Virus record (IMG/VR): IMGVR_UViG_3300015265_000001
Coordinates: 62,001-126,000 of that record
Length of the DNA: 64,000 nt
Reading direction: 5' to 3' (one strand)
The position numbers and the translations under genes were made by a program. The notes beneath the pieces were generated by a model. It did no database searches. It was not told the DNA's origin and saw only the letters and a program-made list of their open reading frames with translations. This document shows positions 12,028 through 46,611 of the stretch, one piece after another; the first letter of the stretch is position 1; each line of letters begins with the position of its first letter.

Positions 12028-12111
12028 TCATGTAGTTGGTAGTACAGATGTTTGACATTTGTTAATACAACTTCGCTATAGCAAACTATCTTCGTAATAA
12101 GGAAAACACTC

Positions 12112-14130
12112 ATGAGTCTGAATACCGGTTCCGAAAGCACTTCCTGGAACGAGAACAAGCCTACCGAAAACGCCAACCAGGCTCCAGGTGCTACCGGCAC
12201 CATGGCTCCGCTGGATGGTCTGGCCGGCCTGCTGCGTCTTCCTTCGATGACCTCCGACAACCGCAACCTGAAGGAAGTGGCCGAGACCATCGAGAAACTC
12301 GAAGGCATTTACGAGAATGCCAAGAAATCCACCACCAACGAGCTGCAACGCAAAATCGTTCCGACCGTTGAAATGCTGACCCCGTCCATCTCGGCTCAAC
12401 TGCCGGGCGTCGGTCTGTACGTTGTCTTCGACGGCACCATGTACGTAATGGCCGCGCTGTTCTACAACCGCACGCTGAGCATCGGCGTCGAGCGCATCAC
12501 CGTCAACGCCAACAACATCATGCAGCAAATGTCGGCGCCGCTGACCCCGGCTCAGTACCCGAACAACGTGTTCCTGGAAAAGCTGACCTCCCACTACACC
12601 AAAGTGGCCGAAGCTCAGGGCGTGAAGAACGTCAGCGTCATCAACATGATCGTCGTCGACCTGGAAATGCTGCACCACCCAGAAGCCGGCGATCCGAAAG
12701 ACTGGGCTCACCGTCAGGCGAACTACATCGCCTCCGAGTGGGAAGAAGCGATCATGGTCAAGACCGTTCGCGAAATCGTGGCCAAGGGTTACAACATCCC
12801 GGCTCCGTTCGCTACTCCTGACCAGCCATACGGCAAAGACGGCTGCGCCGAAGCCCGCGTTAACGCAATCAGCTTCCGCGCCAGCAAGGCCGGCACCCTG
12901 ACTCCTGACAACATGGAAGTGATCGTTTCGACGATCAACAACAACAACCAGAGCTCCGGCAACTTCCAGGCGAACTCGAAAGAGATCATCCGGGTTACCG
13001 CTGCGGTCAGCCTGAACGGCGTGTCGTGGGAAGATCACCAGCGCTTCATGATGTCGCACCGCTCGCAAGAGCAAATGAACGCGCTGCAACAGTTCCTCGG
13101 CAACTCCATGGGCATGGGTGTCTACCCGTCGGGCTTCAAGCCACTGCGTCCTGTGATCACCGTCGGCACCGTTCAGGCCGGCGAGCAACTCTGCAACAAC
13201 GGCGGTCTGTTCCCGTTCTTCACCGGTCTGTACTCGCTGATGGCGACCAACAACCAGTACGTCTGGTCCGAAGCTCTGCGCCGTCACAGCGTTGGTGCTC
13301 GCGGTAACCTGGCCGACCTGGAAACTCGTGTCGATCAAATGGTCGGTCAGATCCCTGGTGGCTTCCAGAGCCCAGCGCGTATCCGTCTCGACGAGAAGAA
13401 AATGTCGGACACCGAGCTGGTCAACAACTGGATCCGTCAGAACGTTTCGCCGCACGCAACCTTCCAGATCAACCTGATCCCGGCCGGTCCAAATGCGTCG
13501 ATCAACAACTTCTTCTTCCAGCTGGCCAAACAAGGTCAGAACGCGGCGGAAATCAAAGTTGTTATCGCTCTGATCGATGCCATGACCAAAGGCGGCATGT
13601 CCGAAGCCATCCGCGACAACATCAAAGCTGGCACTGGCTGGGTACCGTCCAAACCGGTACTGATCCCAACCGGCATGATCGCTGTCAACGGCCTGGCCGA
13701 GTACGCCGGCAAGAAGTTCAACACCCAGGAACTGGACGAGATGATGATCTCGCACATCAAGGGCCCGAAAGGTCAACTCGCAGCCGAAAGCCTGCTGTCG
13801 ACCATGTACGGCACCGTCCCGGGCGAAGAGTTCAAGCAACGTGCTCAGAAGCTGCGCGTGGAAACCGGTTCGTCGCTGTTCGACGGTCAGGTTCACATCA
13901 ACGGCTGGGCTCAGCCTCACATCTGGGCGCCTGACTTCATGGCCACCATGTCGAAAGCCATGGACTCCATCGGTCAGCTGAACGTTGCCAACAACCTGGG
14001 CAGCTGGCGCAACACCAGCCTGGCTTCGACGCCTGGCATCGGTCTGGCGACTCTGGTTGGTGCTGGTTCGAACAACGCCACCGGCAACGGTCTGGGCGTG
14101 GCGTACAGCATGAACATGCCGTTCATGTAA
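12112..14130 (+). CDS. chmA: Chimallin, major phage nuclear shell protein (phiKZ gp54 / 201phi2-1 gp105-like)
   Basis: 672 aa with a disordered N-tail and extreme high-expression codon bias. Canonical position between the gp52-like gene and the nvRNAP beta' gene. The sequence resembles recalled chimallins. Confidence 0.88.
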   Translation: MSLNTGSESTSWNENKPTENANQAPGATGTMAPLDGLAGLLRLPSMTSDNRNLKEVAETIEKLEGIYENAKKSTTNELQRKIVPTVEMLTPSISAQLPGVGLYVVFDGTMYVMAALFYNRTLSIGVERITVNANNIMQQMSAPLTPAQYPNNVFLEKLTSHYTKVAEAQGVKNVSVINMIVVDLEMLHHPEAGDPKDWAHRQANYIASEWEEAIMVKTVREIVAKGYNIPAPFATPDQPYGKDGCAEARVNAISFRASKAGTLTPDNMEVIVSTINNNNQSSGNFQANSKEIIRVTAAVSLNGVSWEDHQRFMMSHRSQEQMNALQQFLGNSMGMGVYPSGFKPLRPVITVGTVQAGEQLCNNGGLFPFFTGLYSLMATNNQYVWSEALRRHSVGARGNLADLETRVDQMVGQIPGGFQSPARIRLDEKKMSDTELVNNWIRQNVSPHATFQINLIPAGPNASINNFFFQLAKQGQNAAEIKVVIALIDAMTKGGMSEAIRDNIKAGTGWVPSKPVLIPTGMIAVNGLAEYAGKKFNTQELDEMMISHIKGPKGQLAAESLLSTMYGTVPGEEFKQRAQKLRVETGSSLFDGQVHINGWAQPHIWAPDFMATMSKAMDSIGQLNVANNLGSWRNTSLASTPGIGLATLVGAGSNNATGNGLGVAYSMNMPFM

Positions 14131-14151
14131 CAGCCTGCAATGGATCGGTGG

Positions 14152-14195
14152 GCAAGAGGGGTAACACCCTCTTGCTCGCTGGTCTCTTTTTTCTG
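14152..14195 (+). terminator. Terminator after chmA
   Basis: gcaagaggg-gtaaca-ccctcttgc followed by T tracts. Confidence 0.7.
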
Positions 14196-14218
14196 TTTTT
14201 CTGTTTTTGGAGTAGGCC

Positions 14219-15856
14219 ATGGGCAACATGTATCTACCGGAACTCACTCCGTCGAACAAGTTAGCTATTGAAAAGCTGACGCAGTATAGTGAAGAAAACC
14301 TGGACCCGATGCCGTTCTTTAACCGGTACGCAGCGGCCTTCGGTAAGTCACTGGAGGATGATCTTCGTTATTCGGAGCCGCTGTATTGGGACTTCGAAGA
14401 TTACGACTATCTGCACGACACCAGCCGGTTCAAACCAATCTACCTGAATGAGTTCGACTTCAACATCCAGGAAGATCGGGAAGCAATCGAGCGCTTAACG
14501 CGAATGGAGTTCAACGGTAACTCGTTTGACACCGTCGCCAGTTGTAATCCGTCGTGTGGTTACTATCGCGGCAACTATCGCCTGAAGCAGGGCAAAGCTT
14601 GTCCCAAGTGTGGCGAAGTTCCAGAACTCTTCCTCGATCGTGGTGAAGATACCCGGTTGTGGATGAAGCTGCCAGAAGGGGTAAACGGTTTCGTTAACTT
14701 AGGTTTCTTTTCGACCTTCTTTAACAAGATCGGGATTGGCAGTCCAAAGGTCTGTGTACCTCGATACTTTATCGATCCGATTTATCGGGGGCAGATCAAC
14801 AAGCAGAAGAACACCACGGTCAACCTGATTCGCAACATGCTGGACGAACTCCAGATCACGGAAGTTAGCATGAATAGCTTCCAGGAACGTTGCGATGACA
14901 TCATGCACTGGATGCTGGTGGGCAATGGTCGACGTCACTGCACCACTTCGCATGAAGGTGTGGCGCTGATGGACGTTTACCAGAAGTACAAGCACATCGC
15001 GTTCTCCAAGTACATGAAGGTGCCGAATCGTTATGCCACGGTTCTGGAGAAGCCGGGTAAAGACACCTACGCCTATCCTCACCAGCCAATCACGGCGCAG
15101 CTGTATATCGCGATCGCTGATACCAAGCGTTCCAACTCGGTGGTAAAGCTGAGCGCCGCTGATAAGCGACGTAACTGTGACATCGTCGGTAAGAACCTGG
15201 TTAAACTGGCAGACCAATACCGTAAGGTGAACAACCCAAAAGCGTTGTTTGGTAAGCCGGCAATCAACCGTAAGCATGTGGCCTCCGGTGCAGTACCGTT
15301 CACCGGTCGTTCCGTAGTGACGTCGGTAACGGGTATTCTGAACCCAGACGAGTGGATGGTTCCGTGGAAGATGTGTCTGGCCATTCTGGACTACCACATC
15401 ACGGGCTTCCTGTATCGTCGCGGTCATACGCCGTATCAGGCCGCACAACGGATCAGTCGAGCTGCGTATTGGATCGACCCGCTGATTGACGAATTCTTCC
15501 GCGACATGGAAGATAACAACAAAGCCATTATCCAAAGTGGACGTAACCCGTCGATTGAGTTCCTCAGTCTGCGCAGTGCGTTCCTGCGGGTTAACCGGGA
15601 CCTCCGAGACGAAAGTATCCGGGTACCGATTCTGGCCGTTAGTGAATCGAACACCGACTTTGACGGCGACAACCATTATATCGTCCTTATGGCCGATAAC
15701 GAGTCCAAAGCGAAAGCTTACGGCGCGTGGGGTCATCACCAAACGTTGGACCGCAACATTCCGTTTACAGTGGGTGACTACGCTGGTCAAGCGGCGACTA
15801 ACCTCATGAACCTTAATACGCTCATGGCGCAGACGCCGATTATCGACGCAGCCTAA
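14219..15856 (+). CDS. Non-virion RNA polymerase beta' N-terminal subunit (phiKZ gp55-like)
   Basis: Zn ribbon CNPSC...CPKC, GRSV motif, and the catalytic NTDFDGDN. Confidence 0.9.
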   Translation: MGNMYLPELTPSNKLAIEKLTQYSEENLDPMPFFNRYAAAFGKSLEDDLRYSEPLYWDFEDYDYLHDTSRFKPIYLNEFDFNIQEDREAIERLTRMEFNGNSFDTVASCNPSCGYYRGNYRLKQGKACPKCGEVPELFLDRGEDTRLWMKLPEGVNGFVNLGFFSTFFNKIGIGSPKVCVPRYFIDPIYRGQINKQKNTTVNLIRNMLDELQITEVSMNSFQERCDDIMHWMLVGNGRRHCTTSHEGVALMDVYQKYKHIAFSKYMKVPNRYATVLEKPGKDTYAYPHQPITAQLYIAIADTKRSNSVVKLSAADKRRNCDIVGKNLVKLADQYRKVNNPKALFGKPAINRKHVASGAVPFTGRSVVTSVTGILNPDEWMVPWKMCLAILDYHITGFLYRRGHTPYQAAQRISRAAYWIDPLIDEFFRDMEDNNKAIIQSGRNPSIEFLSLRSAFLRVNRDLRDESIRVPILAVSESNTDFDGDNHYIVLMADNESKAKAYGAWGHHQTLDRNIPFTVGDYAGQAATNLMNLNTLMAQTPIIDAA

Positions 15857-16534: not shown

Positions 16535-16570
16535 GCAAGGGAGGGTAACACCTCTCTTGCTTTATTTTTT
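16535..16570 (+). terminator. Terminator
   Basis: gcaagggagg-gtaaca-cctctcttgc plus a T tract; near copy of 14152-14175. Confidence 0.75.
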
Positions 16571-16641
16571 TGGTAGACGCCATCTTACAGCGTTGTCTGT
16601 AAGTTTATTCTTATAGAGGGTCTTTCTATAAAGGAAACGGT

Positions 16642-34127: not shown

Positions 34128-34146
34128 TAACAGCTTTATTTTTTTG

Positions 34147-35445
34147 CTATTTGACAGAAGTTTTGAGGTTCAACTTGGCGCGCTTACGACCCGCCTGGTG
34201 GTGAGCCTTCATACGTTGCAACATGAACTCAGTAGGAACCCGTACCACTTCCGCAGACAAACGAGCCGCCAGTTTACCCAGGCCTTCACCCAAGCACGTC
34301 TTGCAGTAGTTGCCGTCAGGCGACAAGCAGAACTGAGGAACCCGCATGTTGACTTTCTTGTTGATCAGGGTCTGGAACACTTCAGGAGTGATTGCCGTTA
34401 CCGTCTCGCCCTTCATGTAGAACCCGCCAATCCAACCACGGTTATCAGGTGTCAACATGATCGGCTCAGTACGAGGAGTACCACAGTCGATACCCTCTAC
34501 CTTGCCACGACCTACCAGACGCAGGGTTTCTTTCACCTGACTACCACCTTCACCGGTTGCCATGGAGCGAGAGTACGCACCTGCTACCGCGGCGTTGGTC
34601 TGAGCAACAACCTGTTCAGGGTCAAGACCTTCATCCAGACTGCGAGGCAATGCAATCCAGCCGTTACCCGAAGGATCTTCTTCAATACCGAACGCAATGA
34701 ACATACGCTTACGCGCGGTACTGATGAACTTGTCGTTGATGAAGAAGTTCTTGCTCTTGCCTTTGAGCATCTCTTCCCGGTCCATTTGAACCAGTTCTTC
34801 AACGGCCGCTGTAAAGGCTACAGCGTCGTTCATCTTGCCTTCGGCCTTCAGCTTGGCAAAGAGTTCAGCTTTGCGCTTAAGCACCGCAGGAGAGACCGAG
34901 AGGGCATCTACGCCACCAGGTTTAACAAAGAACGAACCCAACCCTTCCAGATAGTAGCAGTTCTCAGTAAACTTCAAGCAGTCGTCCACAGAAGCCTTGT
35001 CGTCAGGAACCGACTCCCCTTCCTTGGGATTATCGACCATGAGTCGACTGATATGTCCTTCAATCAACTTCTTGGTAAAGCCCTGATTAACATAATCCAC
35101 TTTACCCTTGAACGGCTCCCACCAGAGGACGATGTTGAACAGCATCAAACCAAAGGTGGATTCCATCGCTACACCCTTGAGCACAGGGTGGAAGTCACCA
35201 GGGAAGGAATACTTGTCATCCATGACAGCAAATGGTTCGTTCACATTGCCGTCGAGCTGAACCTGTTTGCCATCGATCATGGCGTGGAACTTACCGCCTT
35301 CTACAAAGACAGCTCCCGGTACGTGTTTAAAGAGTCCGGATGATTCCTCGTCTTCAAACTGGATCGAGATGATCGACTGTACTGAGGCTTTGTAGGTATA
35401 ACCCAGGTCGTTAAACCAATGCTTCAAGTAGTCAAGTTTATTCAT
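34147..35445 (-). CDS. Virion RNA polymerase beta'-like subunit (phiKZ gp80-like)
   Basis: Bridge helix ATGEGGSQVK, DCGT, and Zn motif CLSPDGNYCKTCLG. Start MNKLDY overlaps the upstream stop. Confidence 0.85.
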   Translation of the reverse strand: MNKLDYLKHWFNDLGYTYKASVQSIISIQFEDEESSGLFKHVPGAVFVEGGKFHAMIDGKQVQLDGNVNEPFAVMDDKYSFPGDFHPVLKGVAMESTFGLMLFNIVLWWEPFKGKVDYVNQGFTKKLIEGHISRLMVDNPKEGESVPDDKASVDDCLKFTENCYYLEGLGSFFVKPGGVDALSVSPAVLKRKAELFAKLKAEGKMNDAVAFTAAVEELVQMDREEMLKGKSKNFFINDKFISTARKRMFIAFGIEEDPSGNGWIALPRSLDEGLDPEQVVAQTNAAVAGAYSRSMATGEGGSQVKETLRLVGRGKVEGIDCGTPRTEPIMLTPDNRGWIGGFYMKGETVTAITPEVFQTLINKKVNMRVPQFCLSPDGNYCKTCLGEGLGKLAARLSAEVVRVPTEFMLQRMKAHHQAGRKRAKLNLKTSVK

Positions 35446-36343
35446 GGCTGAGATCCAGGGTACCAATCATCTTCTCAACTGCCAGCAAAGCCAGGTGATC
35501 AGTGATGACGTTATTGACAAGAACCAGGAGCTGCTCGCGAAGGGTATCGCTATTCAACTCACTGATGAGGTAAAGACCCATGACTTCTTTGCCGTAAGCG
35601 ATTTGGTTGTCCATTGACGGGTAGTCGAGGAGCTTAGCCAGATCCGGTTTAAAGAAGTTCAGGAGGGTCTCTACAGGGCTCCCTACGCGGCCGTTGTGGA
35701 TAACGTGCTCATACGCCAGGGTGCTCTCGATAAGACCCTTGTTGGCCCGTATACGCTTGATCAGGGTAATGGGGATACCTTCCTCTACATCACCGGTCAA
35801 GAGGTTGTCGCGGATAGCCTTTAAAGTTACCTCGCTAACATCTTGTAGTAGCAACTCGTAATTAACGAGAGAGACACTGTCACCCACGTATTTCTGGAAA
35901 ATCAGCAGAAACCGTTCCACAGGGGGGATGTCAACAGAATCCAGAATGTCACCCAGACCAATGACGTCTTCGTAGTGGTCCATATCGTGGAAGAAGTTAC
36001 CGACATTGATCAGCTCCTCAGCACGCTCGTGAGTGACCTCATCCAGGTTGATAATAAAACCAAGACGGGTCAACACATCGATTATATTGTTGGTGATCAG
36101 TTCGTAGATCTGTTTCTTTTTGAGGGGGGTATCAAAAGTTTCATCTACGAGGATTTCGGTGATGACGTTTTGCAACAGGGACTCGGGGACATTCAAAAGA
36201 ATTAAATTGAACCCGTCGGTCAATATTTTAGCTTGAGGGTCGGGGATAGAGGCCTTGAAGTCAACCCAAATACCACCGATGAGAGTAGCGGCGAGATCTT
36301 CATCCGCACCCATCACCACTACTTCGTCAGTCTCAATATTCAT
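35438..36343 (-). CDS. Conserved hypothetical (probably virion) protein
   Basis: The real start is likely MNIETD (36343, AGGA RBS). The longer track ORF is an antisense shadow. Confidence 0.7.
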   Translation of the reverse strand: MNIETDEVVVMGADEDLAATLIGGIWVDFKASIPDPQAKILTDGFNLILLNVPESLLQNVITEILVDETFDTPLKKKQIYELITNNIIDVLTRLGFIINLDEVTHERAEELINVGNFFHDMDHYEDVIGLGDILDSVDIPPVERFLLIFQKYVGDSVSLVNYELLLQDVSEVTLKAIRDNLLTGDVEEGIPITLIKRIRANKGLIESTLAYEHVIHNGRVGSPVETLLNFFKPDLAKLLDYPSMDNQIAYGKEVMGLYLISELNSDTLREQLLVLVNNVITDHLALLAVEKMIGTLDLSHE

Positions 36344-36382: not shown

Positions 36383-37165
36383 ATGAGCACTAAGCAAGTA
36401 CAAAAGAAAGCCAAACGCGCCCAGGCCTCCAAACAGAAAAAGAAACGGGCCAACGTGGAGCGTAACAGCATTCAGTTCAACCTGGGTCGTCGTGAGATGG
36501 CGCGTATCGCCAAGACCCCTGAAGGTATCCAGGCAGCCGAAGCCAAGCTGCGTTACGACATCGCCACCAAGGGCGTGCTGCAAACGGCACTCGACCTGAA
36601 GAAGGATTTCGAGAAGACCAAGGAAAAGCTGAACAACATCGAGGTGCTGAAAGGCATCAACCAGATGATCCCAATCCTGGGTAACATCCACGGTGTGGTT
36701 GAAGTCACCAGCAAACTCGTCGACATGAAGAAGACCACCCTGACCTCCGAAGAGCAGGGCATGATCGACGAATACGATCGCAAGGTTGTGGGTATCGCTG
36801 AAGACATCCACGCGATCTTCGAGTTCATCAACAAAGAACAAGAAGTCGAAGAGTACATCGAAATCTTCATGCACTACACCGACCTCCTGGCCGAAGTGAC
36901 CGAGTTCAGCATTCCTGAGCTGATGGAAAAGGTGCTGCGTCCTCGCGAAGAAATCATCAACGAGTACGTGCGCGAACACAAACACGAAGGCGAAGACAAC
37001 TACACCTTCGGCATGCGCCTGCACGGCGAGCGTATCACCCGCGTCCAAGCGGTGTACCGCACCCTTCCGGCCGGTGAAGTTCCGTCTTCTGTCAAGAAAC
37101 CAATCGAAGGCACCATTCTTCCTGAAGATGCTTTCGAAGACATCGGCGCCAAACAAGTCAACTAA
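36383..37165 (+). CDS. Conserved hypothetical protein with a basic N-terminus
   Basis: 260-aa ORF with strong codon bias. Confidence 0.7.
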   Translation: MSTKQVQKKAKRAQASKQKKKRANVERNSIQFNLGRREMARIAKTPEGIQAAEAKLRYDIATKGVLQTALDLKKDFEKTKEKLNNIEVLKGINQMIPILGNIHGVVEVTSKLVDMKKTTLTSEEQGMIDEYDRKVVGIAEDIHAIFEFINKEQEVEEYIEIFMHYTDLLAEVTEFSIPELMEKVLRPREEIINEYVREHKHEGEDNYTFGMRLHGERITRVQAVYRTLPAGEVPSSVKKPIEGTILPEDAFEDIGAKQVN

Positions 37166-37187
37166 CCATTACGCAAGGAAGTAGTAC

Positions 37188-38918
37188 ATGAGTACCGATC
37201 TCCCTCAAGATCCACTGGAACAAGATTCGCCGGCTGAAGTTGTAGCCGCAAAACCTGCTCCAGCTCCAGCACCTACCTATCGTGATGTGCATACTGCTGC
37301 CAACACCACGATGAAAGAACGACTGGTCCCTGAAAACGAAGTCATCCGTGACCTCACCGAAGAAGAGCGCCGTGACGGCGGTTTCCTGACGGTTTTCCTG
37401 GGTAACCGTAAAGAAGACATCCTCAAGGCCCAAGGTCTGATCGGTCGCTGGTTGGCTTACAGCGGCGCCAAGGCGGTGTTCGATGAAGAGCGCATGCCTG
37501 AATCGGTGTTCAAGAAGGCCGAAGCGGATTGGCTTCAATTCATCGAAGCAACCTTCCCTGGTAAAAGTTCTGACGAAGTGTCTACTCACGCCAGTGAGCT
37601 GTACGCCTTCATGTCGGAAGTCCAGGACGAACTGAAGATCCGCACCACGATCCTCAATGAGGCTGGTGTGTCCAACGTCTCCAACCGTGGTGGTGTGGTT
37701 ACTGGCGACATCGTGGGTAAGAAACCTTCGGCCTCGACCAAGGGCTTCTCGCATCGTGAGAACATGCGTCGTCGTGCTGCTCGTAAAACCTCGAGCGGTT
37801 CTGACAAGCTGTCTTACGACGTGCTGTGCCGTGACTCGTTTGCACTGTTCGCCTTCTCGCGTACCAACCATACCGAGATGGGTTCTCTGATCAACGACAT
37901 CCGTCGCACCATTACCGGCTACGTTCAGCAGATCGGTAACAACAGTGCTGTGTTGGCACGTATCGCTTCGATCCGGGTAATCTGGAACTTCATTGCGAAA
38001 CGCATCACCAACGCCAGCGTAACGGATCTGGCAGACTTCAACCAGCTCGCCAACGTGATCCTGTTGACGGACATGGATGCGATCATCACTGCGCTGATCG
38101 AGTCCACCAACAGCAAGGGTATCAACCTGAACCTGCGCTGCTTGTCTGGCAGCTGTGACTGGGAAGCCTTCAACCTGGTGCAGGCGTCGAAGCTGCTGCG
38201 TCAACGTCACCACATCACGTCTGACGAAGATGAAGCTATCTACGCCAACCTGATCAACGGCCACGCCAAGTACACCATGGAAGAAACTCGTGCGATGAGC
38301 CGTGCTTCGACCTATGGTCTGGAAAGCAACCGCGTCTACAACGACGATCGTTCGATGTACCTGGAATGCGCTCCGCCTACTCTGGCTGAAGCCTTTGCTG
38401 CGTTCGACTTCTTCATCGGCGAAATCAACCCTGAGCTGGCCGAGATCCGCACCAAGGTCATCGACCCGGCGGAATACCAGACCCAGGTCACGATGGTCCA
38501 CAACAACCTCGGTTCTACCGAGTTTATCCACTGGGTGCAGAAGCAAGTTGACCTGCCGGCGGAAAACACCGACGAGGAAGAAACCGTATTCCTCCGCAGT
38601 GAGATTCCGGATGCTGAGTTCAACGGCGGTCTGATGGACGTGCTGCGCGACCAGGAAGACCTCAACCGCAACCTGGTCAAGTTCGTCCTGAACAAGACGC
38701 CGTACATGTCGCGTACCTTTATGGGTGTGCGTAACTACGTGTGTCCGAAGTGCCGGAAGAACATGGGTGACCTGGAAGACCCTGAAGGTCTGCTGGATCG
38801 GAAGTTGGGCTACACCCCAATCGACCCTGTTATGAGTTTTTTTACCCTCACCCAGTGGGCAATCCTCAAGCAGACGTCCGTACAAAGCAAAGTCAAGTCC
38901 GAAGCCCTCTCGGAATAA
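37188..38918 (+). CDS. Putative baseplate-hub/tail assembly protein (T4 gp26-like region with Cys motifs)
   Basis: 576 aa with RCLSGSC and CPKC motifs and an AAGGA RBS. The function is inferred. Confidence 0.55.
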   Translation: MSTDLPQDPLEQDSPAEVVAAKPAPAPAPTYRDVHTAANTTMKERLVPENEVIRDLTEEERRDGGFLTVFLGNRKEDILKAQGLIGRWLAYSGAKAVFDEERMPESVFKKAEADWLQFIEATFPGKSSDEVSTHASELYAFMSEVQDELKIRTTILNEAGVSNVSNRGGVVTGDIVGKKPSASTKGFSHRENMRRRAARKTSSGSDKLSYDVLCRDSFALFAFSRTNHTEMGSLINDIRRTITGYVQQIGNNSAVLARIASIRVIWNFIAKRITNASVTDLADFNQLANVILLTDMDAIITALIESTNSKGINLNLRCLSGSCDWEAFNLVQASKLLRQRHHITSDEDEAIYANLINGHAKYTMEETRAMSRASTYGLESNRVYNDDRSMYLECAPPTLAEAFAAFDFFIGEINPELAEIRTKVIDPAEYQTQVTMVHNNLGSTEFIHWVQKQVDLPAENTDEEETVFLRSEIPDAEFNGGLMDVLRDQEDLNRNLVKFVLNKTPYMSRTFMGVRNYVCPKCRKNMGDLEDPEGLLDRKLGYTPIDPVMSFFTLTQWAILKQTSVQSKVKSEALSE

Positions 38919-39391
38919 TCGAAAGGGTCAACAATCGAATACCTTTCAGCCCTGTGTTCGTTCAGGTTAACAATAACCTCTTGGGTAAGTCCATGTCGGA
39001 AGTTACTCCGGAGGCTATGTCGTTTAACGAGTCCATGTTGCATGATTTGAACATGAACTACTACACCCCTGCCACCATGGATCCGTTCTCCTCAGTTGCT
39101 TACATTCCTGGGGAGAACGAGTTTTACCATGAGTGGTCGTTTAAATCTGTCGGCAAACGTTATGGGTATAACAAACTTCACGAGATCCTTCCTTTGAGGG
39201 ATTACATGGAGATGCCCATGTGTATGCTCGATGATTTGCTCACAGGGGTGACTGAGGGACGCGTGCAGCGAGATACCTTCGATAATCCACCTGATCCTTC
39301 CGGTAAGTCCAAGATGCCGAACATGAAGGATAGCAACAACGATCTGAAAGAAATAATGCGACAACTGGGTTTGGACAAAAAAATGCTTTAA
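38855..39391 (+). CDS. Downstream partner ORF in the -1 frame (candidate frameshift extension; alternative start 38993)
   Basis: The frame is open from 38786 across the T7 run and overlaps the upstream gene. No well-spaced strong RBS. Confidence 0.65.
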   Translation: MGNPQADVRTKQSQVRSPLGIIERVNNRIPFSPVFVQVNNNLLGKSMSEVTPEAMSFNESMLHDLNMNYYTPATMDPFSSVAYIPGENEFYHEWSFKSVGKRYGYNKLHEILPLRDYMEMPMCMLDDLLTGVTEGRVQRDTFDNPPDPSGKSKMPNMKDSNNDLKEIMRQLGLDKKML

Positions 39392-44708: not shown

Positions 44709-45104
44709 ATGTCGCATTTGATCCATGTCATCGAATTCAAGAAAGCCCTGACCGAGAAGGGTATCACCTGCCCGATCGAGCAAAGCAAGCTGCTGGCCGA
44801 ACCTTTCACCCGCGCCCTGATCCGTCGTTCGTACCGTCTCGGTGGTTGGACCACCGCAATGGATGAGTGCACCTGGGCCATGCTGGAGAAGTGGAACTCC
44901 GTGTCCCCTATCCCGGCAGCGCTGATCCACAAACAAGCCCAGGTTCGCATCAACATGCTGAACGGCGCGATGATGAACACCGGTACTCTGCCGTGCAAGA
45001 AAGGCTACACCTCCATCGTGAACGACATCGACGTGGGTGAACTGCCTTCCTGCTCCGTCCTCACCGATTACCTGGTACGCGAACTGGAGGCCAACCGTGA
45101 GTGA
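44709..45104 (+). CDS. Small putative virion protein
   Basis: 131-aa ORF with an AAGGA RBS in the head operon. Confidence 0.65.
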   Translation: MSHLIHVIEFKKALTEKGITCPIEQSKLLAEPFTRALIRRSYRLGGWTTAMDECTWAMLEKWNSVSPIPAALIHKQAQVRINMLNGAMMNTGTLPCKKGYTSIVNDIDVGELPSCSVLTDYLVRELEANRE

Positions 45105-46611
45105 TTCCGCTACTTCGCAAATCGATGATTACCAACAGATTGGTAACTCGAATCCGGTTGACTCTTATCAACCAGGTGAAAACAAACAACGTATCGACCT
45201 GACGGAATACTACCAGGTCAGTGAACAGAACAACGCCACCGTTATGGTGATGGGTGCTGAACAACTGAACCTCGGTCGTTTCTCCAAGCAGGTTGCCCGC
45301 CACCTCAAACTCAAGGGCGTCGAGAACTATGACCCTTTCCCTTCGGAGCGTAACGCTCGTATGGGCGCTGAAGGCTTCTTCAGTGCGGTCTACAACGGTT
45401 TCAAAGACTTCATCGAAACCATCATTCGTTACATCCGCATGGCCATCGACTGGGTCGTCGACATGGTCAAAGGGATCTTTGGCTTCCGCAAGTCGGAACG
45501 TATCACCAAGGCCATCGATGACTCGCTCGGCGATCTGAAGAAAGAGTTCGAAGACACGCTGATCAGCTTCGGTTTCAATGTGGCCGAGTACAACGTCGAG
45601 AACTTCCTCGGCGATCTGCCGAAGGGTCAGGATCGTGTTGCTCAGATCTACCTGCTGAAGAACAAGCTCGATAGCGATATCGAACAAGTCAAGAAGCTGG
45701 CGACCTGTGTTCCGCTGATCCAACAGTTGAACGCCAAGGTCAAGCAATCCACTGACAAGGTGACGATCGCCCAGAAACGCCTGAAGAAAGTAATCCTGGA
45801 CGAGTACAACCGTTCGCGTGTACGGGCCAACGCCGGTAACCGTGTGAACGGCGAAGCCTCCAGCGAAGTGGTGGTCATCTCCAAGGCCATGCATGAAACG
45901 GTGCTGACCCTGGGTGTTGAAGAGATCTCTGGTCTGATGACCAAGCTGTACAAAGATCTTTACAGCCTCGACTTCTCCAATGAAGAGCTGGCCAACAAGT
46001 TCGACCAAGTGCAGAACCGTCTGAAGACTGAAGTCGTCAGCAGTGCTTCGGTTGTGGCCCGTGTGGATGTTTCGGCTACCCTGCTGGAAATCCAGCGTCT
46101 GAACGTTCGTTACCAGGAACTGATGGACGACGAGGTAGACATCTCGAAGGTCAACTGGAAAGCACTGGGTGAGATCATCGATAAGTCTGATTCTGAAAAG
46201 ATCAGCTCGATGGCCAACTACTACAGTGCTCCTCAGCTGCTGGCGGACTACCAGGCTCTTTCGGTGGCTACGCGTAACTTCACTCAGCTGTGCTACTCGA
46301 TCAACAAAGAAGTACTGCGGGTCGAGAAGCAGATCGTCAGCCTGGTCGAGTGGTACGGTCGTATCCACGCCTACTACTACAGCGGTGTTCTCGGTGACAT
46401 CGAGGGTATCGAGAAGGCTGTCAATGAAGCGCGTGCAAAAGGTCTCAATCCGATCATCGAAGGCCGAGTGTTCATCAAGGACGCAGACGCCAAGACGTTC
46501 GGCGAGAAGCTGACGGCCAACGTGAACTTCGCAATCCATAACGATATTGGTGGGGTGAAGACCAGCCTCAACAACTTCACCAAGCAAATCGGGGCAGGTA
46601 AATTGCTATGA
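45097..46611 (+). CDS. Internal head protein paralog
   Basis: GTG at 45097 with a GGAGG RBS. RMGAEG is followed by FFSAVYNGFKDFIETIIRYIRMAIDW. Confidence 0.75.
   Translation: MSDSATSQIDDYQQIGNSNPVDSYQPGENKQRIDLTEYYQVSEQNNATVMVMGAEQLNLGRFSKQVARHLKLKGVENYDPFPSERNARMGAEGFFSAVYNGFKDFIETIIRYIRMAIDWVVDMVKGIFGFRKSERITKAIDDSLGDLKKEFEDTLISFGFNVAEYNVENFLGDLPKGQDRVAQIYLLKNKLDSDIEQVKKLATCVPLIQQLNAKVKQSTDKVTIAQKRLKKVILDEYNRSRVRANAGNRVNGEASSEVVVISKAMHETVLTLGVEEISGLMTKLYKDLYSLDFSNEELANKFDQVQNRLKTEVVSSASVVARVDVSATLLEIQRLNVRYQELMDDEVDISKVNWKALGEIIDKSDSEKISSMANYYSAPQLLADYQALSVATRNFTQLCYSINKEVLRVEKQIVSLVEWYGRIHAYYYSGVLGDIEGIEKAVNEARAKGLNPIIEGRVFIKDADAKTFGEKLTANVNFAIHNDIGGVKTSLNNFTKQIGAGKLL

What the first reader, a model, noticed from the sequence alone, without database searches (positions are those of the whole stretch)
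38786..39391. Candidate programmed -1 frameshift (T TTT TTT) fusing the 576-aa tail-assembly-like gene to the next ORF
Seen: the gene ends ...ATG AGT TTT TTT ACC, giving a correctly phased X XXY YYZ heptamer at 38837-38843. The -1 frame is exactly the frame of ORF 38855..39391. It opens after a TGA at 38783-38785, has no stop across the site, and lacks a well-spaced strong RBS. Two consecutive TTT codons are unusual in a gene that uses mostly TTC. The predicted products are 576 aa and about 734 aa, with junction PVMSFF-YPHPVGNPQ. Known: lambda G/GT and P2 E/E' tail chaperones use -1 frameshifts, P2 on a T run. Inference: a chaperone-style frameshift in a jumbo myophage; I do not know of one described in this family. 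Caveat: the gene is not next to a tape-measure gene.
Basis: partly seen in the sequence, partly recalled or inferred. Interest (0 to 1): 0.7.

Follow-up and report, generated by a model that had tools for sequence, protein, structure and literature searches.

The report
Conserved -1 frameshift in jumbo-phage core gene
A core gene shared by all nucleus-forming jumbo phages (phiKZ gp77 family) carries a deeply conserved slippery T-run that most likely lets ribosomes shift back one base, making a second, about 160 residues longer protein that no genome record examined annotates.

Summary
Gene A (37188..38918, 576 aa) carries an in-phase T_TTT_TTT at 38837-38843. The -1 frame is open from 38786 to 39391.

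Comparative evidence strongly supports a programmed -1 frameshift.
- All 55 related loci examined (phiKZ, EL, 201phi2-1, SPN3US, PCH45, a Bacillus phage and IMG/VR contigs, down to about 15% identity) keep NNT_TTT_TTY in phase; the Bacillus phage has TTA.
- In the 34 loci tabulated, the preceding codon encodes eight different amino acids yet always ends in T.
- The next ORF is always in the -1 frame and open from the heptamer. It has no conserved start: the first start codon of any kind is 87 codons downstream in phiKZ.
- The 74-nt "intergenic" stretch evolves as -1-frame coding.
- Two -1-frame prolines just after the slip site are invariant, while the overlapping 0-frame residues vary.
- In the window's own genome this is the only in-phase T_TTT_TTY in about 190 genes.

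Gene A is Chimalliviridae core gene cg18 (phiKZ gp77). It lies among RNA-polymerase and DNA-polymerase genes, not in a tail module. Its fold weakly resembles T4 gp26-type baseplate-hub assembly chaperones.

I found no conserved stimulatory RNA structure and no published description. No protein or RNA evidence was available.

The parts
37188..38918 (+). Gene A: zero-frame ORF, 576 aa. It is Chimalliviridae core gene cg18, the homolog of phiKZ gp77, EL ORF047, 201phi2-1 gp136 and Goslar gp081.
   Evidence: ORF. phrog_4585, E 1e-97. tblastn to EL, RisingSun and others. Profile hit to phiKZ gp77, E 8e-15. cg18 in Table S3 of PMC10299810. AF2 model pLDDT 84.7, pTM 0.84.
38837..38843 (+). Slippery heptamer T_TTT_TTT (X_XXY_YYZ). 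Zero-frame codons are AGT TTT TTT. Proposed site of tandem tRNA-Phe -1 slippage.
   Evidence: Sequence. In phase in all 55 loci examined. In the 34 tabulated the preceding codon is always NNT (8 codon types), the first Phe codon is always TTT, and the second is TTT 20, TTC 13, TTA 1. Unique in its own genome.
38843..39391 (+). -1 frame continuation of the long isoform: 182 codons plus the stop at 39389-39391. Predicted long product is 734 aa (residues 1-552 of A plus 182).
   Evidence: Open frame. phrog_19747, E 2e-33. Always in the -1 frame and open for 151-185 codons in relatives. This domain is homologous across both halves of the family (hhalign prob 93.9, E 1.5e-7).
38844..38918 (+). Dual-coding overlap. 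In the zero frame it encodes the last 24 residues of A (part of a predicted C-terminal helix) plus the stop. In the -1 frame it encodes YPHPV... and a disordered linker.
   Evidence: Fewer variable columns here (15 of 75) than in flanking segments. -1-frame Pro at positions 4 and 6 is invariant in 23 of 23 loci, while the overlapping zero-frame residues vary. Helix 547-575 in the AF2 model. First 30 residues of the -1 part have pLDDT below 50.
38919..38992 (+). Apparent intergenic gap that is coding in the -1 frame (...IIERVNNRIPFSPVFVQVNNNLLGKS).
   Evidence: Codon differences among 7 relatives (syn:nonsyn) are 52:33 in the -1 frame, against 15:74 and 3:79 in the other two frames. Variable columns concentrate at -1-frame third positions. 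ATG 38993 is replaced by ATC, CTT or ACC in relatives.
38993..39019 (+). Internal ATG codons at 38993 and 39017. They are possible but non-conserved independent starts of a short B-only product.
   Evidence: SD scores. Starts are not conserved in relatives.
38898..38928 (+). Small local hairpins around the zero-frame stop: TCCGA-AGCCCTC-TCGGA at 38898-38914, or GCCCT...AGGGT at 38904-38928 with TAA in the loop. Role uncertain and not family-wide.
   Evidence: A stop-in-loop hairpin is only modestly enriched over control positions (Wilcoxon p 0.007) and is absent in EL, Miami and L038.

Best explanation
Gene A (cg18, the phiKZ gp77 family) is expressed as two N-terminally identical proteins.

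Most ribosomes read straight through the T run and terminate 25 codons later. That gives the 576-aa form, which ends in a predicted amphipathic helix.

A fraction of ribosomes slip back one base. With tRNA-Phe on TTT in the P site and tRNA-Phe on TTT/TTC in the A site of U_UUU_UUY, both tRNAs can re-pair with UUU in the -1 frame. These ribosomes then read YP.P, a roughly 25-residue disordered linker and a roughly 120-residue helical domain. That domain is what databases annotate as a separate small ORF. The result is a 734-aa form.

Shown here:
- the signal;
- its phase;
- family-wide conservation against codon bias;
- absence of a conserved start for the downstream ORF;
- protein-coding constraint in the -1 frame, beginning right at the slip site and running through the apparent intergenic gap.

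Inferred:
- the shift happens on the ribosome rather than during transcription;
- its efficiency is low to moderate, because no conserved stimulator was found;
- the fixed ratio of short to long form matters for function.

The protein's role is unknown. The best lead is a T4 gp26-like baseplate-hub or tail assembly chaperone. That would make this the jumbo-phage counterpart of the lambda G/GT arrangement.
For: (1) Heptamer conservation. NNT_TTT_TTY is in phase in all 55 loci examined, spanning 86% down to about 15% identity, from hosts ranging from Pseudomonas to Bacillus. In the 34 tabulated loci, the preceding codon encodes 8 different amino acids but always ends in T. The first Phe codon is always TTT, while the second toggles between TTT and TTC, so synonymous change is not saturated out.

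(2) Own genome. TTC is preferred 2032 to 797. Only 7 of 142 Phe-Phe pairs start with TTT. This is the only in-phase T_TTT_TTY in about 190 genes.

(3) Frame relation. ORF B is in the -1 frame in every locus and open from the heptamer for 151-185 codons. That includes the 218-nt annotated gap of phiKZ.

(4) No conserved start. The first ATG, GTG or TTG of the -1 ORF lies 87 codons after the heptamer in phiKZ, 89 in AgentSmith, 62 in RisingSun and 68 in L030.

(5) Coding signature. The 74 nt after A's stop evolve as -1-frame coding: 52 syn to 33 nonsyn, against 15:74 and 3:79. -1-frame Pro4 and Pro6 are invariant in 23 of 23 loci, while the zero-frame residues on the same bases vary among L/H/R/Q and T/I/S/A/R/V.

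(6) No in-frame fusion. None of 34 protein clusters is an in-frame fusion; lengths are 535-606 aa. Both forms therefore seem to be kept.

(7) Not an assembly error. An independent metagenome contig also has T7. The site is present in many independently sequenced phage genomes, among them phiKZ and EL.
Against: There is no direct evidence of the long protein. No proteomic, ribosome-profiling or RNA data covered the site; the RNA runs did not reach it.

No conserved 3' stimulatory structure was found. Local folding downstream is no stronger than in control windows. A long-range stem was not supported. No upstream SD-like stimulator was noticed by eye.

The conserved Phe-Phe dipeptide explains part of the T run on its own.

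In this window an internal ATG at 39017 with GGAGG could also give a separate short product.

Transcriptional slippage would give the same protein and was not excluded.
Confidence: 0.78

Rival explanations
1. Transcriptional slippage. The phage or host RNA polymerase adds one extra U at the T6-T8 run in a fraction of transcripts. Ordinary translation of those mRNAs then gives the same 734-aa fusion.
For: The site is a homopolymer run of T6 to T8. No ribosomal stimulator was found. These phages use their own unusual multisubunit RNA polymerases, whose slippage behaviour is not known to me.
Against: What is conserved is the phase of the X_XXY_YYZ pattern. The T at the third position of the preceding codon is kept through 8 amino-acid replacements. 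That matters for tRNA re-pairing, whereas run length is what matters for RNAP slippage. Many clades keep only T6 (NNT TTT TTC), shorter than the runs of about 9 known to me to slip efficiently. The run is never lengthened beyond 8.
Confidence: 0.12
2. Two ordinary genes. ORF B is translated only from its own internal start (38993 or 39017 here), and the T run is a by-product of a conserved Phe-Phe dipeptide.
For: All GenBank records examined annotate it this way. ATG 39017 has a GGAGG nearby. Phe-Phe is conserved at the protein level.
Against: Start codons are not conserved and often lie far inside the conserved domain. Sequence upstream of every candidate start evolves as -1-frame coding. The frame relation is -1 in every locus. 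The NNT and TTT choices go against codon usage.
Confidence: 0.05
3. Artefact or decay. A homopolymer sequencing error, or a recent frameshift mutation, splits what is really one gene.
For: Homopolymer runs are error-prone in some sequencing chemistries.
Against: The same arrangement appears in more than 50 independently sequenced genomes, among them phiKZ and EL, and in an independent metagenome contig. The zero-frame tail is itself conserved in length and character, at 21-27 codons in the window's half of the family. No in-frame fused version exists among 34 clusters.
Confidence: 0.01

Closest known systems
Lambda G/GT and P2 E/E+E' tail assembly chaperone frameshift (the conserved -1 frameshift of long-tailed phages, Xu, Hendrix & Duda 2004; cited from my own knowledge)
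   Same: A slippery heptamer lies a few codons before the end of the upstream ORF. The downstream ORF is in the -1 frame and has no start of its own. The two products share an N-terminus and the long form gains a C-terminal domain. The arrangement is conserved even where sequence is not. P2 also slips on a T run. Residues 199-336 of A resemble a tail-assembly-chaperone fold (PF08748, TM 0.59 over 102 aa).
   Different: The upstream product is 576 aa rather than about 100-150 aa. The gene is not between the tail-tube and tape-measure genes; it sits among RNA-polymerase and DNA-polymerase genes. There is no HMM-level relation. Binding partners are unknown.
T4 gp26 (PF12322, baseplate hub assembly chaperone; Leiman et al. 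2010, PMC3004832)
   Same: The C-terminal two thirds of A give consistent structural hits to gp26-like 'baseplate hub' proteins. BFVD: prob 0.96-1.0, TM by target 0.45-0.56. ESM Atlas shape: TM 0.56 over 248 aa. ESM features: 84 of 100 named hits. The homologs carry no virion-protein note in the phiKZ and 201phi2-1 records, whereas neighbouring genes do.
   Different: There is no sequence-profile match. A is more than twice as long and has an extra N-terminal helical region and a four-Cys site. No frameshift is known to me in T4 gene 26.
E. coli dnaX tau/gamma and IS-element orfA/orfAB -1 frameshifts
   Same: Tandem slippage on an X_XXY_YYZ heptamer in a bacterial translation system sets a fixed ratio of two isoforms.
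   Different: dnaX uses A_AAA_AAG with an upstream SD-like element and a downstream hairpin, and the shifted product is the shorter one. Here no conserved stimulator was found and the shifted product is the longer one.

Membership tests
Programmed -1 ribosomal frameshift site (X_XXY_YYZ tandem-slippage class) | Slippery heptamer in the correct phase of the upstream ORF | tested here: met
   T_TTT_TTT at 38837-38843. In phase in all 55 related loci examined.
Programmed -1 ribosomal frameshift site (X_XXY_YYZ tandem-slippage class) | The -1 frame is open across the site and continues into a conserved coding region that has no conserved start of its own | tested here: met
   Coding signature upstream of any start.
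Programmed -1 ribosomal frameshift site (X_XXY_YYZ tandem-slippage class) | Stimulatory element: a 3' hairpin or pseudoknot 5-9 nt downstream, or an upstream SD-like sequence. Common but not universal. | tested here: not met
   No excess folding energy downstream against control windows (p 0.36-0.83). Long-range stem not supported (p about 0.5). Only lineage-specific candidates, for example an 8-bp stem 9 nt after the phiKZ heptamer.
Programmed -1 ribosomal frameshift site (X_XXY_YYZ tandem-slippage class) | Trans-frame protein actually produced | not testable with these tools
   No proteomic or ribosome-profiling data were available. The RNA runs did not cover the site.
Tail assembly chaperone G/GT-type frameshift pair | Two overlapping ORFs joined by a -1 shift near the 3' end of the first | tested here: met
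   The shift lies 25 codons before A's stop. It lies 10-47 codons before the stop in relatives.
Tail assembly chaperone G/GT-type frameshift pair | Position between the tail tube (major tail) gene and the tape-measure gene | tested here: not met
   Neighbours are RNA polymerase beta-type subunit and DNA polymerase genes in EL, RisingSun and FishSpeaker, and a helicase and RNAP subunit in phiKZ.
Tail assembly chaperone G/GT-type frameshift pair | Chaperone fold or family (for example PF08748) | tested here: inconclusive
   ESM Atlas shape match TM 0.59 over 102 aa for residues 199-336. No HMM match in the genome.
T4 gp26 / PF12322 baseplate hub assembly chaperone | Sequence-profile match to PF12322 above the curated cut-off | tested here: not met
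   No hit at E up to 1 in 16 family members, at E up to 0.1 for the window protein, or in the whole genome at E up to 10.
T4 gp26 / PF12322 baseplate hub assembly chaperone | Shared fold | tested here: inconclusive
   BFVD hits to gp26-like proteins have prob 0.96-1.0 but TM only 0.45-0.56 by target. ESM Atlas TM 0.56 over 248 aa. An AFDB cluster named 'Baseplate hub subunit' scores prob 0.80. Nothing in the PDB.
Chimalliviridae core gene cg18 (phiKZ gp77 / Goslar gp081 / RAY gp267) | Homology to phiKZ gp77 and conserved synteny | tested here: met
   Profile hit to phiKZ gp77, E 8e-15. phrog_4585 matches all 16 diverse members. Table S3 of PMC10299810. Synteny with EL ORF044-051.

The most novel reading that the evidence does not exclude
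cg18 is the long-missing tail or baseplate-hub assembly chaperone of phiKZ-like nucleus-forming jumbo phages, and its G/GT-style -1 frameshift is an ancient, family-wide and probably essential feature. Unusually, the frameshift works on a bare U_UUU_UUY with no conserved stimulator, in a gene that has moved out of the tail module. On this reading, the small 'hypothetical' ORFs annotated downstream of gp77 homologs in hundreds of jumbo-phage genomes are not genes. They are the C-terminal domain of a second isoform.
Probability: 0.35. Interest if true: 0.75.

Novelty: new member of a known kind. Interest (0 to 1): 0.64.

Why it matters
Nucleus-forming jumbo phages are heavily studied, yet cg18 is still listed as a hypothetical core gene. 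None of the 21 GenBank records I inspected, and none of the papers I searched, mention recoding in this family; those papers include two reviews from 2025-2026.

If the frameshift is real, it would:
- correct the annotation of a core gene across the family;
- remove a spurious small ORF from each genome;
- predict a protein of about 80 kDa that can be sought in existing phiKZ, PhiPA3 and Goslar proteomics;
- show that a bare T-run heptamer has been maintained by selection from Pseudomonas phages to a Bacillus phage;
- offer a genetic handle, through synonymous disruption of the slip site, on the function of cg18.

If the gp26 / tail-chaperone resemblance holds, the conserved tail-assembly frameshift rule would extend to a phage group where, as far as I know, it had not been found.

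Tried and rejected
RNA structure
- Long-range stem between the C-rich segment right after the heptamer and the purine-rich segment after the zero-frame stop. It looked attractive in several MFE folds, but duplex energies are no better than controls across 38 loci. Rejected as a family-wide feature.
- Excess local RNA structure in the 45, 70 or 110 nt after the heptamer. None was found against control windows.
- Hairpin with the zero-frame stop in its loop. It is only modestly enriched and absent in several clades. The tail length varies from 10 to 47 codons across the family, so a fixed-distance or ribosome-queue model is unlikely. Kept as a side note only.

Function of gene A and ORF B
- Pfam, PHROGs, PDB sequence and PDB/Swiss-Prot fold searches for A and B gave no informative hit.
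- The AF2 model of the B part is of low confidence (pLDDT 58) and was not searched.

Other checks
- Megablast to phage records found no near relative.
- Public sequencing runs: the RNA-labelled runs hold only short contigs that miss the site. Transcript slippage therefore could not be assessed.
- Sigma-70 promoter and terminator scan between A and B found nothing on the + strand.
- The GenBank labels 'ZipA-like cell division protein' and 'baseplate protein' on homologs have no HMM support here.
- The 734-aa fusion was not folded, because a trans-frame sequence cannot be derived letter for letter from one frame.
Full report
**1. The observation**

The window is part of a 226,985-bp IMG/VR phage record with direct terminal repeats.
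- Gene A runs 37188..38918 on the + strand (576 aa).
- Its codons near the end read ATG AGT TTT TTT ACC. T_TTT_TTT at 38837-38843 is therefore an in-phase X_XXY_YYZ heptamer.
- The -1 frame is closed by TGA at 38783-38785 and then open to the stop at 39389-39391.
- The predicted products are 576 aa and 552 + 182 = 734 aa, with junction ...PVMSFF|YPHPVGNPQ.

**2. Is it more than chance? The window's own genome**

I called about 190 genes with a self-trained codon model.
- TTC outnumbers TTT 2032 to 797.
- Of 142 Phe-Phe pairs, 87 are TTC-TTC, 48 TTC-TTT, 4 TTT-TTC and 3 TTT-TTT.
- The only in-phase T_TTT_TTY in any called gene is this one.
- Three T7 runs and the single T9 run lie outside called genes. 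Two more T7 runs fall within the first 15 codons of a called ORF, upstream of a probably mis-set start.
- An independent soil-metagenome contig of a 99%-similar strain has the same T7 with no indel.

**3. Relatives**

Gene A and the downstream ORF are syntenic with EL ORF047/048, RisingSun gp53/54 and FishSpeaker. A profile of the family finds phiKZ gp77. The core-genome study of nucleus-forming phages lists gp77 as cg18, 'hypothetical protein' (Goslar gp081, RAY gp267; PMC10299810 Table S3).

I examined 55 loci in all:
- the window;
- 34 IMG/VR loci at 22-86% identity;
- EL, RisingSun, FishSpeaker, ZK_P1, Miami, PDCC-1, VP4B, AerS_266, pEt-SU and phiKZ;
- 201phi2-1, Xoo-sp14, RSF1, Ea35-70, PCH45, Bacillus phage AgentSmith, SPN3US, Asesino, Halocynthia phage JM-2012 and Vibrio phage Yong XC32.

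A few IMG/VR loci are the same phages as GenBank records. The 45 loci reduce to 35 non-identical sequences.

Every locus has NNT_TTT_TTY in phase, with TTA as the last codon in AgentSmith.

In the 34 loci tabulated:
- The preceding codon is AGT 13, AAT 7, GTT 5, GCT 3, ACT 2, CTT 2, GGT 1, TAT 1. That is eight amino acids, always ending in T.
- The first Phe codon is TTT 34 of 34.
- The second Phe codon is TTT 20, TTC 13, TTA 1.

The variation at the second Phe codon and in neighbouring codons shows that synonymous sites have turned over. The retained T and TTT therefore reflect selection on the nucleotides that a -1 tandem slip needs.

**4. The downstream ORF**

In every locus it is in the -1 frame relative to gene A. 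The -1 frame is open from the heptamer for 151-185 codons.

It has no conserved start. The first ATG, GTG or TTG in the -1 ORF lies 87 codons after the heptamer in phiKZ, 89 in AgentSmith, 62 in RisingSun, 68 in L030 and 63 in pEt-SU. In phiKZ the annotated 218-nt gap between gp77 and PHIKZ076.4 is entirely open in the -1 frame. My estimate from base composition is that this has roughly a 1% chance in a genome of about 37% GC (GC content from my own knowledge).

In the window's close relatives, ATG 38993 is replaced by ATC, CTT or ACC.

**5. Coding signature**

Seven relatives at 81-87% identity were compared.

| Segment | syn:nonsyn, -1 frame | syn:nonsyn, zero frame | syn:nonsyn, +1 frame |
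|---|---|---|---|
| 74 nt between A's stop and ATG 38993 | 52:33 | 15:74 | 3:79 |
| Body of ORF B | 66:45 | 9:102 | 8:99 |

The gap behaves like the body of ORF B. The dual-coded overlap has fewer variable columns, 15 of 75.

In 23 loci of the window's half of the family, -1-frame residues 4 and 6 after the slip are Pro in 23 of 23. The zero-frame residues encoded by the same bases vary among L/H/R/Q and T/I/S/A/R/V. The -1 frame is therefore read from the slip site itself, which no downstream initiation can explain.

The extension domains of the two halves of the family are homologous (hhalign prob 93.9, E 1.5e-7). No in-frame fused homolog exists among 34 protein clusters, whose lengths are 535-606 aa. 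Both isoforms therefore seem to be maintained.

**6. Mechanism**

The best explanation is tandem -1 slippage of two tRNA-Phe on U_UUU_UUY.

I looked for stimulators and found none that is conserved.
- Folding of the 45-110 nt downstream is no stronger than in control windows.
- A long-range stem suggested by several MFE folds is not supported across 38 loci.
- A hairpin with the zero-frame stop in its loop is only modestly enriched and is missing in several clades.
- Lineage-specific candidates exist, for example the phiKZ stem GGCCTCGA/TTGAGGCC starting 9 nt after the heptamer.

Efficiency is therefore unknown and probably modest.

Transcriptional slippage would give the same protein. It is disfavoured because what is conserved is phase rather than run length, and many clades keep only T6. 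It is not excluded: the RNA runs did not cover the site.

**7. What the proteins are**

Gene A folds confidently (pLDDT 84.7, pTM 0.84).
- It has four invariant cysteines: C318, C323, C519 and C522.
- A C-terminal helix spans residues 547-575 and begins at the Phe-Phe. The frameshift replaces most of this helix with YP.P, a disordered linker and a helical domain. The model of that part is of low confidence, pLDDT 58.

PDB and Swiss-Prot fold searches and all HMM libraries are uninformative.

Three searches point to T4 gp26-type baseplate-hub proteins (PF12322):
- BFVD Foldseek, prob 0.96-1.0, TM by target 0.45-0.56;
- ESM Atlas shape, TM 0.56 over 248 aa;
- ESM features, 84 of 100 named hits.

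Residues 199-336 also match a tail-assembly-chaperone family (PF08748, TM 0.59 over 102 aa). T4 gp26 is listed as a hub assembly chaperone (Leiman et al. 2010, PMC3004832).

There is no sequence-level support, so this is a lead, not a membership.

The gene neighbourhood is RNA-polymerase subunits, DNA polymerase and a helicase, not tail genes.

**8. Comparison with known systems and novelty**

In architecture this matches the lambda G/GT and P2 E/E' pattern. It fails two features of that family: position next to the tape-measure gene, and small size.

None of the 21 GenBank records inspected annotates a join or ribosomal slippage at this locus.

Full-text searches found no paper describing it. 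The core-genome paper and two recent reviews of jumbo and nucleus-forming phages contain no mention of frameshift. The two reviews were also checked for 'slippage' and 'recoding', with no mention.

I rate it a new member of a known kind: a well-understood recoding mechanism in an unreported, family-wide and ancient location.

**9. Verdict**

- Observation: confirmed.
- Interpretation as a -1 frameshift fusion: strongly supported by comparative genomics.
- Not shown: the protein-level proof, the efficiency, whether slippage is ribosomal or transcriptional, and the function.

Noticed in passing
window 37158-38885 (-), 34147-35466 (-), 12076-14259 (-), 45061-46587 (-) and others: Many genes have an almost full-length open reading frame on the opposite strand. 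One example is a 575-aa antisense ORF opposite gene A. These are probably shadow ORFs, created because codon usage avoids TTA, CTA and TCA. They could mislead gene callers.
   Followed up: partly
window 16560-16572 and 34134-34146; genome C1:16506 region; near copy at C1:45989: The exact 13-mer CTTTATTTTTTTG recurs in intergenic positions: three exact copies in the 227-kb genome, two of them in the window, plus one near copy. About 0.01 copies would be expected by chance. It is a candidate phage promoter or terminator motif.
   Followed up: partly
whole genome (G000): There is a strong codon-pair bias at Phe-Phe. TTT is almost never the first codon (7 of 142 pairs), although it makes up 28% of Phe codons overall. 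This suggests genome-wide avoidance of slippery T runs.
   Followed up: partly
gene A residues C318, C323, C519, C522 (window about 38139-38753): Four cysteines are invariant or nearly so across the whole cg18 family, arranged as C-x4-C ... C-P-x-C. This suggests a zinc site built from two distant knuckles, close to the conserved TPIDP..FF segment.
   Followed up: no
L019 (phiKZ NC_004629, minus strand, 71684-71903): The annotated 218-nt gap between gp77 and PHIKZ076.4 is open in the -1 frame and contains no start codon of any kind. An 8-bp GC-rich stem (GGCCTCGA/TTGAGGCC) starts 9 nt after the phiKZ heptamer, which is unusual in this AT-rich genome.
   Followed up: partly
window 39377-39383: An A7 run (GAC AAA AAA ATG) lies four codons before the stop of the -1 ORF. 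It is not in slippery phase and probably has no consequence.
   Followed up: no
GenBank records of homologs: Homologs of gene A carry conflicting labels: 'ZipA-like cell division protein', 'baseplate protein' and 'baseplate hub assembly protein'. None has HMM support here. Only the baseplate-hub labels agree with the weak structural matches.
   Followed up: partly
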